Shown here piece by piece: positions 25,185 to 37,058 of a stretch of DNA of 64,000 nucleotides. The position numbers were made by a program, and so were the translations under genes. A model generated the notes under the pieces. It searched no databases. It was not told the origin of the DNA and saw only the letters and a list, made by a program, of their open reading frames with translations. The stretch is taken from contig NW_003314280.1 in assembly GCF_000143415.4 (NCBI RefSeq), positions 1,111,663 to 1,175,662 on the forward strand, written 5' to 3'. Positions within the stretch are counted from its first letter, which is position 1. Every line of letters starts with the position of its first letter. This stretch comes from Selaginella moellendorffii (Eukaryota; Plantae; Lycopodiophyta).

Positions 25185-29359
<4,175 letters not shown>

Positions 29360-30284: not shown

Positions 30285-31787
30285 TCACAACTGACGATTC
30301 AGCAGGATGGCAAGGACGATCGCCGCGATCAACTTGGAGTGGACGAGGAACGAGCCAGCAGCACCGCTACAGTCGGCTCTCTCGAATCCAACTCTCGATC
30401 TCTCGTTGTCATACTCCACGAGGTAATTGCTCTGCTGGTAGTTTCCCAGTACGTTGATCTTGCCAAAACCACTTTTCTGGGAGCTTAGGATCGCCAGGCA
30501 CACCGTAACTTCGTTGCCGGCAGCCGAGACCGGCACGAACAGATGCTCGAAGCGGAGCTCCAGCCTGACATTGTTCTGCAGCGACAGCCTCACCTCCGGC
30601 ACGCCGGGAAGGCTCGAGCCAGCCGAGATGTTGTAGCAGTCGTCGAACCCCGCGGCCGCGCCAACTTTCTTCCGCAAGCCTGACCGGTTGGAGGCGGCGA
30701 AAGCGTTGCGGAAAGCCGTGTAGGCGTCGTCCACGACCCGAGTGAAGGTGGTGCCCGAGTCGAGGACTGTGCCTCCATCGCCGGTGCTCGGGTCAAGCTT
30801 GAAAGCCGACTCTGGAATGGCCAGAGTCTTGCCGTCGACGGAGATGGAAGTGAGGCCGACGTAGTAGAGCTGAGAGCGAGCAGGAGTGACCGGGTTATCC
30901 AGCAGCGGCGTGTAGCCAACCTTGCTCTTGGATAGGCCCGAATCACCGAGAAAGATGACGCCGGTTGCTCGAGGCTGCCAAGGCTGCGATGGGAAACAGT
31001 AGCTGAACTTGCTGCCACCAAGCCGGTCCTTGAGCTGCGACGGCAGCGAGAGATTACCTCGGTTGAATCCCACGATGCCGAGGCTGCCGAGGTCGACGAG
31101 AAATCCCTGCGGGCTGTGAGCACAGCCAAAGGCAACGTCGCGGAACTGGACGGCTTGGCCGCTACTGTTGGTGCTGTTGAGAAAGATCACGTCCTGCGAG
31201 AAGTCCCCGGTGGAGTTTCGCGAGTCGCCATAGGAGAGCGAGTACGTGCAAGTGGCGGACGAGTTCACGCAGGGCTGGGACGAGCCATTGGAGGTTTGCT
31301 GCTGGACGGCCAGGCAGAGTTGCGAGATGCAAGGAACTTGGCGGTAGCTCTGGGAGGCTGCCGGGTCGAAGACAGGCCTGGAGCGGCTCCCGCACTGGAC
31401 TAGCACGGCCTCGCTCCCCGTGTCGATGATGGCGCTTAAGTTCTTCTGGAGTGAGCCGATTCCCAGCTGCATGGAGAAGAGCGCGTAGTCTTCGAGCGGC
31501 GTGACCACGGACCTCACTCCACTGGTTGGCCGATTCCCTCGCAAGTCAAGGTGATTGTTTTGGTTGTCTTGGACTTGAGACTGGATCCTGCTCAAGCTCT
31601 CACGGACTTGTTCCTGCAGGAAAGTTGGGAAGACTGGACGCCAAAAGGAGCTGAGAGGCCTGTCCTCTCCGGCGGCACGTACCACGAAGAAGCAAACGGC
31701 GATGGAGAAAACGCTTTTGAGTCGCTGACCATAGCTCTCGCTGGAGTTTGAGCGGAGATGGGAAAGAACTTCTCGCGATCGAGGCAT
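30285..31787 (-). CDS. A1-family (nepenthesin-like) aspartic protease with a hydrophobic C-terminal tail
   Basis: Intronless 500 aa; catalytic IIDTGSE and VLDSGTT, Cys-rich insert, LGNYQQ motif. Confidence 0.93.
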   Translation of the reverse strand: MPRSREVLSHLRSNSSESYGQRLKSVFSIAVCFFVVRAAGEDRPLSSFWRPVFPTFLQEQVRESLSRIQSQVQDNQNNHLDLRGNRPTSGVRSVVTPLEDYALFSMQLGIGSLQKNLSAIIDTGSEAVLVQCGSRSRPVFDPAASQSYRQVPCISQLCLAVQQQTSNGSSQPCVNSSATCTYSLSYGDSRNSTGDFSQDVIFLNSTNSSGQAVQFRDVAFGCAHSPQGFLVDLGSLGIVGFNRGNLSLPSQLKDRLGGSKFSYCFPSQPWQPRATGVIFLGDSGLSKSKVGYTPLLDNPVTPARSQLYYVGLTSISVDGKTLAIPESAFKLDPSTGDGGTVLDSGTTFTRVVDDAYTAFRNAFAASNRSGLRKKVGAAAGFDDCYNISAGSSLPGVPEVRLSLQNNVRLELRFEHLFVPVSAAGNEVTVCLAILSSQKSGFGKINVLGNYQQSNYLVEYDNERSRVGFERADCSGAAGSFLVHSKLIAAIVLAILLNRQL

Positions 31788-32085: not shown

Positions 32086-33588
32086 TCAAATCTGCGCACC
32101 CCAGACATCTTGCCTGGCTTTTAGTCGCCAGCCTTTGAGCTCGCTGCCCTCGATGCTGCTGATGGATGGAGCGATGTCCGAGCCTTGGGGAACTCTCACC
32201 CGAGCAACGAGCTTCTGCCGGGCCTTGAAAAGCGACACGGGTTCTCTCACCCCGAGCTGCTTTAGGTGCTGCTGGAGCTCCTCCTCCGTGACCGTCGGGT
32301 TGAGCTCCGAGATGAAGATGGTGGGATCGCTGTCGGCGTCGTCGCGTTTCAGAGGTGGCGGCCGAGTTTGAGCCGGGGCCAGCTTCACAAGCTTGCTAGT
32401 CTCCTTTTCAATCTTGTTCTTGACATCTCGCACGGCTCCCAGTTCGTAGAGCCGCTCTAGCGTTAGCTTGTCCCAAAGGATCTCTGGAATAGAAGTAGCG
32501 GTGACGATCTTGTTCGTAAGGTTGTGGAGTTATAACACACCTGTTGGCTTTGGGAGGCTCGTTCCTGTGAAGATGATTCTTGTTGGCGTGCATATAACAT
32601 CCACAGGAACGTCGTGTTTTGCCATGAGCTCGATTGGCATGTCACTTACGAGTTGCTTATCGTCCACTGCGAGCGAGAAAAGAGAGAAAGAAAAGAATAA
32701 GAACAAGCTCGCGATGAATAGAACTTAGTATTTACCTGTAGTCACCACCAGCGTTTTCTCGTTTATTTTCATGCGTCGAAGAAGCACGTATTCCATGTCT
32801 TCCAGGCCCTGTTATCCAATTCTCGGTATCAAGAACATTTCACTTTCGAAAAAGCTTTCTTACGTCGCCTTTGCCAATCCTTGCACCAGTTTGAGGATCA
32901 ACAGCAACGGAGCCAACCACAATGAAGTTGACAATGACGAATTCATCCATTTTCATGTCCCTCCCGAAATTTACAAACTCTGGGAACACTCTGGTTAGAG
33001 CCGAGTCGATCACATTGCAAAAAAGGAAGCCTTACTTCCTTTCATGCACGCCTCTGCTATCTGCGTGGTAGTCATGGCCGCGGGGTTGATCATCCTGAAA
33101 GTACCAGTTTGCAAGTGAGGAATAAGAACACTCTTCTTTGCTGCGACGTAAATGTAAGTTTTCGAAAGCCATGGTTTTCTACGAGCCCGGTACCTCGCAG
33201 TAGCATGGTTCTCACGGGCTTGAGAACCGTGTCGGATCCTACGCAAACGCAAAAAGAATCACGATACTCGGGCAATTTCCTCGAGAGCTGTGAGCCAACA
33301 ATCAAAGAAGAAAAACTAAGAGTTGAACGACGTAGAAACGAGGAAAGGATCGTCACTTACCGTGTACGCAGCCACATTTGCACCACGGAAGACGGGATAT
33401 CGATTCCTTGGCACTGTGCTCACGCCCGATTCGCACAAGCTCCACACTTTCTTCCTCACAGCCCATTTCCAAGCGGCCTCGCCGGATTCCGCCAATGCAG
33501 CTACATCGGAGCTCGATCGCGAGCTCGCCAGTCGATTCCAGCACGCCGACGCCGCCCGCCGAGCCCTGGAGCGCAGCGCAGCTTCCAT
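32086..33588 (-). CDS. MTHFSD: 5-formyl-THF cyclo-ligase-like (COG0212/MTHFSD) protein with a C-terminal RRM, paralog 1
   Basis: [29 protein letters not shown]|[18 protein letters not shown], then the RRM-like [19 protein letters not shown]. Exons join in frame. Confidence 0.85.
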
Positions 33589-33592
33589 CGCT

Positions 33593-33626
33593 CACCATAA
33601 ACCCTAGATACCCACCATAAACCCTA
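33593..33626 (+). promoter_or_regulatory. Two direct copies of CACCATAAACCCTA (telo-box AAACCCTA) between head-to-head start codons
   Basis: 33593-33606 and 33613-33626. Confidence 0.65.
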
Positions 33627-33636
33627 AAATTTCCAA

Positions 33637-35197
33637 ATGCTGAGGAAGCTCCGGGCGCCGCTCCCTCGCATTCCCTGGACGAGGAGCTCATCGTCCTCGA
33701 GCTCCACCTCCTCGAGCTCCTCTTTCGAGCCCCATGACACTTGGAAATGGCTGATCCGGCAGCAAGTCTGGGACACATTCCGGATGAAACAGCGCCGATT
33801 TCCAGTGTTTGACGATCCTCAGGCGGCGGCTGAGAAGGTTTGCGCGTAGATTTCGATTTCTTTGCGGCTCATCTCTTCCATCCAGGTCCGAAAGCTCCCG
33901 GAATTTCGAGAAGCTCAGTGCCTGTATGTGAGCCCCGATGCTCCACAAAGGCCAATGCGAGCGATGGTATTAACAAGTATTACGTGGGACTGCTCGATGG
34001 TTTCCTTTCTTCGCTCTCGCAGAGAGCAAAGCTTACGAAGCTCTCTCTTGGTTTGCAGACCAGAAAAAGCTTCTCGTCTCGCGATTGCCAAAGGGATTGT
34101 TCACGATGATGGATCCTGTTCACTTGTCCGATTTCGACACGATGAAAGCCTTGGAGCAACCAGGTGCGTGCTGCGATTTTCGGTGTGAGTTTGATCAAAT
34201 GAGAAGTATGATCCTTTTATCCTGCAGAGTTTAAGATGGATGGCATCCCGATTGGACTCGACGCAAGAATGAGAGTCCAACTCTTGGTCACTGGCTCTGT
34301 TGCTGTTGATCCAAAAACTGGAGCTCGTCTCGGCAAAGGCGAGGTGAGCTACTATCCATGGATCTTCCAAAGGAAAAATAATCTTTTCTTTCTCTTCAGG
34401 GCTACTTTGACATGGAATACGCAATTCTTCGTCATCTCAACATTGTCAACGAATCAACGTTAGTGGTTACTACAGGCGAGTGGCCGCTTTCCTTTCCTTG
34501 AAGGTTTTCAATCGATCTATCTAAAATTCCGATTTTTTTCCTTAGTGCACGATGACCAGCTTGTGATTGATCTTCCGGAAGACAAGCTCCTCAAGTACGA
34601 TGTTCCAGTGGATGTTATATGCACCCCAAAGAGGACCATCTACACCCAGACTAAAATCCCAAAGCCAAGTGATGGTAACGTGACAAATCTCCTCACTACC
34701 GTTGTCACTCTTTGATTTTTTTTCTGCAAGGTATTCTATGGGAGTGTGTGCCACGCCATATGCTCAGCAAGATGCCCGTCCTGCGAGAGCTCAAAGACGC
34801 AGTCGAGAAGAAGCGAGAGGCCGCTGTGGAAATGGCTGCAAAGACAGATCCACCGCTCATTGCTCCCATCGAGACTGGACCCGCGATTTTCATCAAAAGC
34901 CTCAATCCCACTCTCACGGAGCAGGAGCTCAAGTCACATTTGGAGCAGCATGGATTAGCGGCGGAGGAGCTGTCGCTCTACAGGACTGGAACCGGGAAAA
35001 ACGTTGCTCGAGCAGTGATAGCCCAAGGCACGGACGTGGAGAAATGCGTCACCGCGATCGACAACACAAAGCTCAAAGGCTGGATCATGAGAGCCAGGAG
35101 GGATAAACACACCAAGGAAGAGGAGCCACCTCCAGACCCGGCTATGGTGGCTCGGCAAGCAGCGGCTCAAAGGATCCGAGGCACGCGTTTCTTCTAA
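33637..35197 (+). CDS. MTHFSD: COG0212/MTHFSD-like protein with a C-terminal RRM, paralog 2
   Basis: [28 protein letters not shown]|[43 protein letters not shown]. Confidence 0.85.
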
Positions 35198-35403
35198 GCA
35201 AGTCGAAGATATCTACTTGGATCGTCGTCCTCGTCATCGCAGGGATTCACAGCAGTGTTGCAGTGGTAGAAGACGCGAAAGAATGGATGAACTATCAACG
35301 ATACGAGAGCTTCCTTCTTGATCGTCCTCCTTGGTGGAAGGCGTTTCTTTTCGGCCTTGATCTTGCTTGGCAGCGTGGTTTTCTTGTCCCAGCCGCTCTC
35401 CAT
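35194..35403 (-). CDS. Candidate 69-aa small basic protein (LPPRR motif)
   Basis: ATG-initiated ORF filling the gap between paralogs 2 and 3; RLPPRRTIKKE resembles a motif seen in short plant proteins. No independent support. Confidence 0.35.
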   Translation of the reverse strand: MESGWDKKTTLPSKIKAEKKRLPPRRTIKKEALVSLIVHPFFRVFYHCNTAVNPCDDEDDDPSRYLRLA

Positions 35404-35552
35404 TGGGAAATTTTTCTAGCACTCTAATGGGCTCCTCGTCCTTGCTTGGATTTCTCCTTAGAAATTTGACACTCTTTTATACTTCCAATAGGTCCCCGCG
35501 TTGTTTTTCAAAACTAGGTCCTTTTAGGGCTTTAGGAAGGGTTCTTGGAGAG

Positions 35553-37058
35553 ATGCGCGTGAGGATCTCGTCGCCGCGCGGAGAGATCAGGTGGGCGCTA
35601 CCGGCATTGACGATTTCCAGAAATTTTTCCGGGAGGAGGCCAAGATCAGAGAGGCCGAGCGCCGAGGACGCCTGGAAGTGGACAATCCGGAAGAAGGTTT
35701 GGGATTTGGTCGCGGGCCAGAGGGTCGTCAAGAGTCCCAAGAACAGGACTCCAAACTTCGAAGGCGCAGCGATCGCAGCGCACAAGGTTTGTGAGTTGTG
35801 AATCGAGGATGACTTGGTTTCCTTATTTTTTTCCCCCTTTGTGCTCTTGAGCTAGGAGAGCTATCTGCATTTCGCGATGCCAAGGTCGTCAACGTTGGCC
35901 CAGAGGCCGCGCAGGCACCCGTGAGGCTGATGACTCTGAGAGGTAAGTATCTTACAACCATAGAAAACTAAAAGCCACTACTCCTTTTTATCCTTTGCAG
36001 AGAGGAAGAAGCTTATTGTTCCTTGTCTCAGAAGGCTTGTCAAGGAATTCCTGGCCGAGGTCGATCCAAACGACATGACTCAAGAAGAGTTGGATGATCT
36101 CACTGACGAAGGTAGTCTCGTTCTTCTCTCGAAAATGTTTAACTGCGGTGCGCGTAGAGCTTGGACTTCCAACTAAACCTTTGCAGCTCAGTCCAAAGGC
36201 AGCATTTGAGGTGGACCTCGTTGTTCTGGGATCCGTGGCTGTCGATCCAAAAACTGGAGCTCGTATCGGTGACGGCCAGGTGAAAAACAAAAAACAGAAA
36301 GAGAGAAAATGCAATGTCAACTTTACCTCTTTCAGGGCCTGGAGGACTTGAATTACGCATTGCTTCGCTACATGGAAGCCATAGACAGCTCAACCCCGGT
36401 GGTCACAACAGGTTTGCATTTGTGTTCGTTTTACGAAAAAGCAACTAGCATTTGTCCCAGTTCACGAGAAGCAGCTTGTGGATGATATCCCAGTGGAGAA
36501 GATGATGTGCTACGACGTTCCAGCGGATATAATCTGCACGCCTGAGAGGACCATCTTCACCAACAGAAGCTTTCTCAAGCCAGATGGTAACGAGAAACCC
36601 ATTTCTCCTCGTTAGCAACTTTGCGATCTACAGGAATTTTCTGGGAAAGCTTGCAACCAGAAAAGCTCAGCCGAATCCATGCTCTCCAAATGCTGAAAAA
36701 ATCGCTCCAGAAGGAAATGCGACTCCCAATGGCTCCGTCACTCACACTCGCAAAGCTCAAGCGCTCCTCCATCATCGACGAGCCTTGCATTTTCCTGTCG
36801 GAGCTCTGCCCGAGCGTCACCGAGAGGCAGCTCCGGCAGCACTTGGAGGACCTGGGGGTGACAGCTCGCAAAGTTTTGGTGTTTAAAGCCAGCAGGAAGA
36901 TCGTTGCTCGGGCTATGGTGGACGAGGAGAAGATTGATGCTTACGTGAAAGCTATCAACGCGAGCACGAGACAGCTCGATGGGTGGTCGATAAGAGCGAG
37001 AAGAGACTCCTCGGCGATTCGAACCAAAGCGCGAGAGAAAGAACCTCTTGGCGATTGA
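35553..37058 (+). CDS. MTHFSD: COG0212/MTHFSD-like protein with a C-terminal RRM, paralog 3
   Basis: [10 protein letters not shown]...[26 protein letters not shown]|[37 protein letters not shown]. Confidence 0.85.

What the first reader, a model, noticed from the sequence alone, without database searches (positions are those of the whole stretch)
32086..37058. Three diverged MTHFSD/COG0212 paralogs with an animal-like C-terminal RRM and organelle-type N-termini
Seen: three intact genes share intron positions. Each has a 5-formyl-THF cyclo-ligase-like domain followed by an RRM-like domain (IF[IL]xxLxPxxTExxLxxHL...GWx[LIM][KR]AR) and an Arg/Ser-rich N-terminal extension. Established: animal MTHFSD has a C-terminal RRM and binds RNA. 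As I recall, the Arabidopsis COG0212 protein is single-copy, plastidial and lacks an RRM. Inference: a lineage-specific expansion of organelle-targeted RNA-binding proteins, of interest in a lineage with very heavy organellar RNA editing. The divergent paralogs could act as a heteromer.
Basis: partly seen in the sequence, partly recalled or inferred. Interest (0 to 1): 0.75.

Follow-up and report, generated by a model that had tools for sequence, protein, structure and literature searches.

The report
Spikemoss COG0212/MTHFSD paralog cluster with RRM
Three neighbouring, intact spikemoss genes are fast-evolving copies of a poorly understood folate-enzyme-like protein that kept an old RNA-binding-type tail, which makes this an ordinary gene-family expansion with a tidy split of domains and not a new kind of protein.

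Summary
Window 32086-37058 carries three intact seven-exon genes (A on the minus strand, B and C on the plus strand). They share intron positions and phases and are 41-42% identical. They equal Selaginella moellendorffii RefSeq proteins named "5-formyltetrahydrofolate cyclo-ligase-like protein COG0212".

Each has a 5-FCL/MTHFS-fold domain and a C-terminal domain with the RRM fold.

- The RRM tail is not a spikemoss or "animal-like" novelty. The same architecture occurs in Chara, mosses, another lycophyte and ferns. Seed plants, liverworts and a fifth, well-conserved Selaginella copy (E) lack it.
- The family here has five genes, not three. A fourth RRM-bearing copy (D) lies on the same scaffold.
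- In the ML tree A-D form a long-branched clade sister to E. An AU test does not reject an older origin (p 0.10).
- A-D keep only 61-69% of the family's near-invariant residues, against 96% for E. Among A-C dN/dS is about 0.3, so they are under selection.
- Organelle targeting, RNA binding, a heteromer and any link to RNA editing were not tested.

The scan found the same family before on other DNA of this genome (s1-392299), and I reach the same verdict. Interest is low to moderate.

The parts
32086..33588 (-). Gene A (RefSeq XP_024533163.1, 379 aa). Exons, given high-low: 33588-33361, 33287-33194, 33140-33036, 32979-32864, 32808-32736, 32666-32541, 32483-32086 (stop included).
   Evidence: The spliced model is identical to P0002. 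My first choice of the exon-4 acceptor (32988) was replaced by the RefSeq one (32979). PF01812 scores 69.4 bits.
32125..32319 (-). RRM-type domain of A (residues 303-367), inside the last exon.
   Evidence: RRM_1 scores 22.8 bits on the exon alone and 20.1 bits in the whole protein; the cut-off is 20.7.
33589..33636 (.). 48-bp spacer between the divergent start codons of A and B. It holds two direct copies of a 14-nt unit, each containing a telo-box (AAACCCTA at 33599 and 33619).
   Evidence: Sequence. The motif occurs 6 times in the window against 1.5 expected, and none of 100 shuffles reached 6. A role as a bidirectional promoter is inferred.
33637..35197 (+). Gene B (RefSeq XP_024533234.1, 394 aa). 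Exons: 33637-33837, 33886-33976, 34059-34163, 34228-34343, 34400-34475, 34546-34674, 34731-35197. Intron 5 is GC-AG.
   Evidence: The model is identical to P0001. PF01812 scores 77.9 bits over residues 37-224. The AF2 model has pLDDT 82.8.
34883..35101 (+). RRM-fold domain of B (residues 291-363).
   Evidence: RRM_1 scores 22.9-25.2 bits. Strands 291-297, 319-324, 330-335, 360-363 and helices 303-312, 342-349 have pLDDT 92-97. The domain matches solved RRMs at Z 10-11.5, for example 7ntn at rmsd 1.8 over 77 residues.
35553..37058 (+). Gene C (RefSeq XP_024533270.1, 394 aa). Exons: 35553-35786, 35852-35942, 36001-36111, 36158-36279, 36336-36411, 36461-36586, 36634-37058. An in-frame upstream ATG at 35427 is not used by RefSeq.
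   Evidence: The model is identical to P0152. PF01812 scores 75.5 bits. The AF2 model has pLDDT 83.5.
36786..37004 (+). RRM-fold domain of C (residues 305-377). It falls below Pfam's RRM_1 cut-off.
   Evidence: RRM_1 scores only 13.7 bits. AF2 gives beta-alpha-beta-beta-alpha-beta (305-309, 317-326, 333-339, 342-348, 351-363, 374-377) at pLDDT about 88-97. A Foldseek RRM hit is 2cqi at E 6e-4.

Best explanation
This is a tandem cluster of three functional but fast-evolving paralogs of the plant COG0212/MTHFSD gene in Selaginella moellendorffii.

Shown:
- Each gene encodes a short basic N-terminal extension, a complete 5-formyl-THF cyclo-ligase-fold domain, the family's conserved linker, and a C-terminal RRM-fold domain.
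- This two-domain architecture is the old one in the green lineage (Chara, mosses, lycophytes, ferns), and it matches the architecture of animal MTHFSD.
- A, B, C and a fourth copy D form one long-branched clade next to a fifth Selaginella copy, E. E is slowly evolving, keeps all the family motifs, and has no RRM.

Inferred:
- After duplication in the Selaginella lineage the ancestral roles were split. E keeps the (still unknown, thiamin-linked) COG0212 enzyme role without the RRM.
- A-D keep the RRM-dependent role. Their ligand pocket has drifted: the motifs PVHHRIPNF, QPRLRTGFF and GKGEGFAELEY are eroded, while the glycine-rich GARxGxGxG loop is kept.
- A-D also exchanged the long plastid-type N-terminus, with its YDxERLxLD segment, for a short Arg-rich presequence that looks mitochondrial.
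- I expect them to act as organelle-targeted binding proteins for RNA or a protein partner, with a degenerate or re-tuned small-molecule pocket, and not as the ancestral enzyme.
For: - Gene models and identity to the RefSeq proteins.
- Species and names.
- Domains: PF01812 and RRM_1; AF2 models at pLDDT 83; MTHFS fold at Z 15-16 and RRM fold at Z 10-11.5.
- RRM-bearing orthologs in Chara, Sphagnum, Ceratodon, Diphasiastrum, Psilotum and ferns, and RRM-less ones in seed plants, Marchantia, Riccia, Klebsormidium and Chlamydomonas eustigma.
- Animal MTHFSD clusters are the nearest Atlas neighbours of the Chara two-domain part (score 0.95, TM 0.64 over both domains).
- Tree: the A-D clade has support 100/99 and is sister to Selaginella E at 100/97; terminal branches are 2.0-2.5 against a median of 0.31. 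B alone, or C alone, still sits next to E.
- Erosion: A-D keep 61-69% of 137 near-invariant columns, against 96% for E and 97-100% for Psilotum and Chara. PF01812 scores 69-79 bits for A-D against 105 for E.
- Selection: dN/dS is 0.28-0.37 among A, B and C, with dS near saturation. The reading frames are intact on both haplotypes.
- N-termini: 34-40 residues before the first helix, 5-7 Arg/Lys and 0-2 Asp/Glu in the first 30, predicted disordered.
Against: - The AU test does not reject a tree in which A-D branch outside all other land-plant sequences (delta lnL 19.3, p 0.104), so an older origin of the fast clade is possible.
- No orthologs from other Selaginella species were found, so the duplications cannot be dated.
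- The RRM lacks the RNP1 aromatic residues throughout this plant family, so RNA binding is not assured.
- Targeting was not predicted with a dedicated tool.
- The glycine-rich loop and many core residues are kept, so an altered enzymatic activity remains possible.
- Whether E truly lacks an RRM exon, or the exon is merely unannotated, was not checked on DNA.
Confidence: 0.6

Rival explanations
1. A-D are still enzymes. They would be neofunctionalised COG0212 paralogs with a changed substrate or regulation, and the RRM-type tail would be a passive inheritance or a regulatory or dimerisation module.
For: The whole MTHFS fold is kept with high confidence. The GSVAVDPxTGARxGxGxG loop, VVTTVHDxQLV and DVPVDxICTP are retained. 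dN/dS is about 0.3 over the whole gene.
Against: A third of the family's near-invariant positions are replaced, and differently in each copy. These include PVHHRIPNF, QPRLRTGFF, and the K/E of GKGEG in C and D. The activity of the conserved family itself is unknown: it is 'not a 5-FCL enzyme' according to PMC3223725.
Confidence: 0.22
2. One reading: a lineage-specific invention of organelle-targeted RNA-binding proteins that work as a heteromer and are tied to the very heavy organellar RNA editing of Selaginella.
For: The expansion is most likely Selaginella-specific. All copies have basic presequence-like N-termini and an RRM fold. Other notes of this scan call the genome Selaginella and rich in PPR-DYW genes (unchecked).
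Against: The RRM fusion is ancestral, not invented here. Nothing links the genes to editing: no MORF/RIP or PPR/DYW domain was found in them. The RNP1 aromatics are absent. No test of complex formation was possible.
Confidence: 0.08
3. The copies are redundant duplicates drifting towards loss, with no function of their own.
For: Branches are very long and family motifs eroded. No close orthologs were found elsewhere. Expression is unverified.
Against: All three, plus D, keep about 380-codon open frames and every splice site after roughly 60% amino-acid divergence, and they do so on both haplotypes. dN/dS is 0.28-0.37. AF2 folds both domains confidently.
Confidence: 0.07

Closest known systems
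Plant COG0212 protein (Arabidopsis At1g76730 type), the 5-formyl-THF cyclo-ligase paralog implicated in thiamin metabolism
   Same: It is the same family. PF01812 matches over its full length, the MTHFS fold is present, and the genes fall inside the plant COG0212 clade. The conserved linker after the catalytic-type domain is shared.
   Different: Seed-plant proteins have no RRM and carry a long N-terminus with a conserved YDxERLxLD segment. The window's genes have an RRM and a short Arg-rich N-terminus, and they have lost about a third of the family's near-invariant residues. The function of the family is itself unknown (PMC3223725, PMC4120688).
Animal MTHFSD (methenyltetrahydrofolate synthetase domain-containing protein; RRM structure PDB 2E5J)
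   Same: It has the same two-domain order, a 5-FCL-like domain followed by a C-terminal RRM. Chordate and arthropod MTHFSD clusters are the nearest Atlas neighbours of the Chara ortholog. Papers describe MTHFSD as an RNA-binding protein (PMC8935057, PMC2504292).
   Different: By sequence, the plant tail is no closer to the human MTHFSD RRM than to any other RRM. 2E5J did not appear among the PDB hits. A single ancestral fusion is therefore likely but was not shown here.
Selaginella moellendorffii copy E (XP_024528470.1) and copy D (XP_024533035.1)
   Same: They are paralogs in the same genome. D shares the RRM, the short N-terminus and the fast rate. E is the sister of the A-D clade.
   Different: E keeps 96% of the conserved columns, has the long N-terminus, and ends shortly after the linker without an RRM. 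D lies on the same 2.3-Mb scaffold but outside this window.
5-formyltetrahydrofolate cyclo-ligase proper (MTHFS, e.g. human 3HY3/3HY6, B. anthracis 2JCB)
   Same: It has the same fold (Z 15-16, 176-179 residues aligned).
   Different: Identity is only 13-20%. All close sequence relatives are COG0212/MTHFSD, not 5-FCL. The plant COG0212 protein is reported to lack 5-FCL activity (PMC3223725).

Membership tests
COG0212 / MTHFSD family (5-FCL paralog) | PF01812 domain above Pfam's gathering score | tested here: met
   A 69.4, B 77.9 and C 75.5 bits against a cut-off of 27. On its own, exon 4 of B scores 23.4 bits.
COG0212 / MTHFSD family (5-FCL paralog) | MTHFS/5-FCL three-dimensional fold | tested here: met
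   For the AF2 model of B: 2jcb Z 16.1, and human MTHFS 3hy6 Z 15.7 with 179 residues aligned. C gives the same Foldseek hits.
COG0212 / MTHFSD family (5-FCL paralog) | Placement inside the plant COG0212 clade, not with 5-FCL proper | tested here: met
   All of the best 120 hits are COG0212-like or MTHFSD proteins. The ML tree puts A-D sister to Selaginella E.
COG0212 / MTHFSD family (5-FCL paralog) | Family-invariant motifs (PxPVHHRIPNF, KVNPDxPQK, QPRLRTGFF, GKGEGFAELEY) | tested here: not met
   The motifs are eroded, and differently in A, B, C and D. Only 61-69% of 137 near-invariant columns are kept, against 96% in E.
COG0212 / MTHFSD family (5-FCL paralog) | Biochemical role (thiamin-linked, no 5-FCL activity) | not testable with these tools
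   Only literature statements exist, and for Arabidopsis (PMC3223725, PMC4120688). The primary paper (Pribat 2011) is not held.
RRM (PF00076) | Profile score above the gathering cut-off (20.7 bits) | tested here: inconclusive
   B scores 22.9-25.2 and passes. A scores 22.8 on the exon alone and 20.1 in the whole protein. C scores 13.7, and D has no hit at E<=0.01.
RRM (PF00076) | beta1-alpha1-beta2-beta3-alpha2-beta4 fold | tested here: met
   Both B and C were modelled with this topology at pLDDT about 90. B matches solved RRMs at Z 10-11.5 and rmsd 1.7-2.8.
RRM (PF00076) | RNP2 and RNP1 aromatic residues on the sheet surface | tested here: not met
   RNP2 keeps one Phe (IFIKSL, IFISEL, IFLSEL). 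RNP1 reads K-x-V-A-R-A/V, with Val and Arg where the aromatics normally sit. The other plant orthologs also lack them.
RRM (PF00076) | Binds RNA | not testable with these tools
   This needs EMSA, RIP or CLIP.
Organelle-targeted protein (mTP/cTP) | Cleavable N-terminal targeting peptide | not testable with these tools
   No targeting predictor was on hand. Only composition is available: 5-7 Arg/Lys and 0-2 Asp/Glu in the first 30 residues, and predicted disorder over residues 1-31 and 1-35.
Organellar RNA-editing cofactors (ORRM / MORF type) | MORF/RIP box or a documented link to editing | tested here: not met
   Pfam finds only PF01812 and RRM_1. No functional data exist.

The most novel reading that the evidence does not exclude
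After the ancestral enzyme-plus-RRM protein was split between paralogs, A-D became mitochondrial (or plastid) RNA-associated pseudoenzymes. In this reading an MTHFS-fold small-molecule sensor is coupled to a non-canonical RRM and takes part in organellar RNA processing in a lineage with extreme RNA editing. This would be a plant counterpart of metabolite-sensing RNA-binding enzymes.
Probability: 0.1. Interest if true: 0.65.

Novelty: new member of a known kind. Interest (0 to 1): 0.3.

Why it matters
COG0212/MTHFSD is a conserved family whose function is still unknown in both plants and animals. Selaginella offers a natural experiment. One copy kept every family motif but dropped the RRM. Four copies kept the RRM while their pocket motifs drifted. 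Comparing the two kinds by localisation, ligands and RNA partners could show what each half of the ancestral protein does. The data also correct a likely assumption that the RRM fusion is an animal feature: it is present from charophyte algae to ferns and was lost in seed plants. Beyond that, this is a routine paralog expansion that RefSeq has already annotated.

Tried and rejected
- Joined spliced models were never sent to the search tools. Exons were searched by reference. The exhaustive profile search with the three last exons returned database proteins that proved identical to the models, and those ids were used from then on. Splicing was done only inside scripts, for identity checks and dN/dS.
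So there is no other-haplotype DNA, no allelic dN/dS, no transcript evidence and no DNA check of gene E's 3' end.
- Allelic protein differences (A 3/379, C 9/394, D 6/276, E 6/352) are too few to compare constraint.
- PDB sequence searches did not single out the human MTHFSD RRM (2E5J). Only generic RRMs came up.
- I asked whether mosses, lycophytes or ferns make RRM-less isoforms, so that the paralogs would replace isoforms. The short isoforms are intron-retention truncations inside the enzyme-type domain, not clean RRM-less forms.
- The AU test of an older origin of A-D was not decisive (p 0.104).
- A search for orthologs of B in other species found nothing closer than its own paralogs. The word-index search misses things, however: one search failed to list P0007. 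Absence is therefore weak evidence.
- Rfam found nothing in 28-41 kb.
- The primary COG0212 paper (Pribat 2011) is not held.
Full report
**What is there.**
Reading the region in all frames and following GT-AG boundaries gives three complete genes.
- Gene A runs on the minus strand from 33588 down to 32086.
- Gene B runs on the plus strand, 33637-35197.
- Gene C runs on the plus strand, 35553-37058.

Each gene has seven exons. Introns are 46-82 nt, and intron 5 of B is GC-AG. Intron positions and phases are the same in all three.

Exons were scanned by reference. A profile of the three last exons was run against the 1.84-billion-protein library.

The top hits turned out to be identical to my models. 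P0001 equals B and P0152 equals C. P0002 equals A once I adopted the more canonical exon-4 acceptor at 32979. From there I worked with those database ids.

Their source names are [quoted passage not shown]: XP_024533163.1, XP_024533234.1 and XP_024533270.1, all on a 2.30-Mb scaffold. The organism is thus settled, in agreement with earlier notes of the scan.

**Domains.**
On the full proteins PF01812 scores 69-78 bits against a cut-off of 27.

| Copy | RRM_1 score (cut-off 20.7) | Result |
|---|---|---|
| B | 22.9-25.2 bits | passes |
| A | 22.8 exon alone, 20.1 whole protein | borderline |
| C | 13.7 bits | fails |

AlphaFold2 models of B and C, built with a 29-sequence alignment, reach mean pLDDT 82.8 and 83.5. 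In both, the first 31-35 residues are disordered. In both, the C-terminal domain has the beta-alpha-beta-beta-alpha-beta order at pLDDT about 90 or more.
- The N-domain of B matches 5-FCL/MTHFS structures at Z 15-16 (2jcb, human 3hy6).
- The C-domain of B matches many solved RRMs at Z 10-11.5 (7ntn: rmsd 1.8 over 77 residues).
- C gives the same picture in Foldseek.

The RRM is non-canonical, however. RNP2 keeps one Phe. RNP1 reads K-x-V-A-R-A/V, with no aromatic residues. The same holds for the orthologs in Chara, Diphasiastrum and the ferns.

**Distribution of the fusion.**
A search with the Psilotum ortholog and Pfam scans show the RRM-bearing form in several lineages:
- Chara braunii (RRM_1 30 bits)
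- Sphagnum
- Ceratodon
- Diphasiastrum
- Psilotum (23.7 bits)
- Adiantum
- Ceratopteris

Every listed seed-plant protein, gymnosperms included, is 340-380 aa, covers only about 60-70% of the query, and ends just after the linker. Marchantia, Riccia, Klebsormidium and Chlamydomonas eustigma also end there.

Chordate and arthropod MTHFSD clusters (PF01812 plus RRM_1) are the nearest ESM-Atlas neighbours of the Chara two-domain part. The score is 0.95, with TM 0.64 across both domains. The PDB sequence searches did not single out the human MTHFSD RRM, 2E5J.

The fusion is therefore old in the green lineage and probably older. It is not a Selaginella feature.

**The Selaginella family.**
Besides A-C there is a fourth RRM-bearing copy, D (XP_024533035.1). 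It lies on the same scaffold but not in the window.

There is also a fifth copy, E (XP_024528470.1/isoform X1), on another scaffold. E has the long N-terminus with the conserved YDxERLxLD segment and all family motifs, and it has no RRM.

Alleles of A, C, D and E exist on the second haplotype and are intact.

A careful ML tree (LG+C20+F+G4, 32 sequences) gives these results:
- A-D form a clade with support 100/99.
- That clade is sister to E with support 100/97.
- A-D terminal branches are 2.0-2.5 substitutions per site, against a median of 0.31.

With only B or only C kept, the fast copy still sits next to E. Forcing E to group with the other land plants, away from A-D, costs 19.3 log-likelihood units. 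The AU p-value is 0.104, so an older origin is disfavoured but not rejected.

No protein from another species is closer to B than its own paralogs. That search can miss things, so the duplications remain undated.

**Rate and constraint.**
There are 137 alignment columns that are at least 90% conserved in 25 other green-lineage orthologs.

| Sequence | Conserved columns kept |
|---|---|
| A | 61% |
| B | 62% |
| C | 66% |
| D | 69% |
| E | 96% |
| Psilotum | 97% |
| Chara | 100% |

The losses hit PxPVHHRIPNF, KVNPDxPQK, QPRLRTGFF and the K/E of GKGEGFAELEY. GSVAVDPxTGARxGxGxG, VVTTVHDxQLV and DVPVDxICTP stay.

Nei-Gojobori estimates among A, B and C give dN 0.55-0.58 and dS 1.6-1.9, which is near saturation. 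dN/dS is thus about 0.28-0.37 or less. Together with intact frames and splice sites on both haplotypes, this argues for function and against decay.

**N-termini.**
A-D have only 34-40 residues before the first helix (the WKW motif). The first 30 carry 5-7 Arg/Lys and 0-2 acidic residues. E and the other plant orthologs have 50-111 residues there. This fits a short mitochondrial-type presequence. No targeting predictor was available, so this is an inference.

**Mechanism.**
The best-supported account is a duplication in the Selaginella lineage of an ancestral enzyme-plus-RRM gene, followed by partition of roles.
- E keeps the conserved pocket and lost the RRM.
- A-D keep the RRM and linker, changed their N-terminus, and let the pocket motifs drift.

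I expect A-D to work through binding by the RRM-type domain, to RNA or to a protein partner, in an organelle. The MTHFS-fold domain would act as a degenerate or re-tuned ligand module.

They are listed with their odds in the rival explanations. Nothing here bears on a heteromer or on RNA editing.

**Limits.**
I could therefore not check expression, allelic DNA or the 3' end of gene E. The primary COG0212 paper is not in the library. What is said about the family's function comes from PMC3223725 and PMC4120688. What is said about animal MTHFSD comes from PMC8935057 and PMC2504292.

**Verdict.**
This is a new member, a paralog cluster, of a known kind, and RefSeq already annotates it. The scan met the same family earlier on another piece of this genome (s1-392299). 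My independent checks agree with that report on three points: the ancient tail, the RRM-less conserved copy, and an ordinary expansion. Its statement on expression I could not test.

Noticed in passing
window 33589-33636: The start codons of A and B face away from each other and are only 48 bp apart. The spacer consists largely of two direct copies of CACCATAAACCCTA, each with a telo-box (AAACCCTA). The motif occurs 6 times in the window against 1.5 expected. This may be a minimal bidirectional promoter, or the 5'UTRs may overlap.
   Followed up: partly
window 34476-34545: Intron 5 of gene B has a GC donor (GCGAGT...TTAG), whereas A and C have GT at the same position. The RefSeq model uses it.
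   Followed up: partly
window 35427-35552: Gene C has an in-frame upstream ATG at 35427 that would add 42 residues. RefSeq starts at 35553. It is not resolvable without transcript data.
   Followed up: no
P0030 (Logan contig, 647 aa): This is a COG0212-type protein with two C-terminal RRMs. It groups with angiosperm sequences (next to Ipomoea, support 93/92, long branch) in the tree. That is odd if seed plants lost the RRM. It could be a chimera, a misplaced long branch or a real exception, and its source organism is unknown.
   Followed up: no
window 30285-31787 (-) and 27755-29359 (-): The upstream neighbours are an intronless 500-aa TAXi/aspartyl-protease-like ORF (TAXi_N 139 bits, TAXi_C 127 bits) and a 534-aa ORF with a PI4KB/PIK1 accessory domain.
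   Followed up: partly
P0003 / P0153 (second-haplotype scaffold, 352 kb): Older GenBank models (EFJ06354, EFJ06355) fuse B's last exon with parts of C and unrelated downstream sequence. UniRef therefore carries an 'RRM domain-containing protein' that is an annotation artefact.
   Followed up: partly
Diphasiastrum, Ceratopteris, Adiantum orthologs (P0166/P0010, P0021/P0327, P0172/P0177): Other non-seed plants also carry two RRM-bearing COG0212 genes each. The ferns show two old paralog lineages. Retention of duplicates is thus not peculiar to Selaginella; only the rate and the domain split are.
   Followed up: partly
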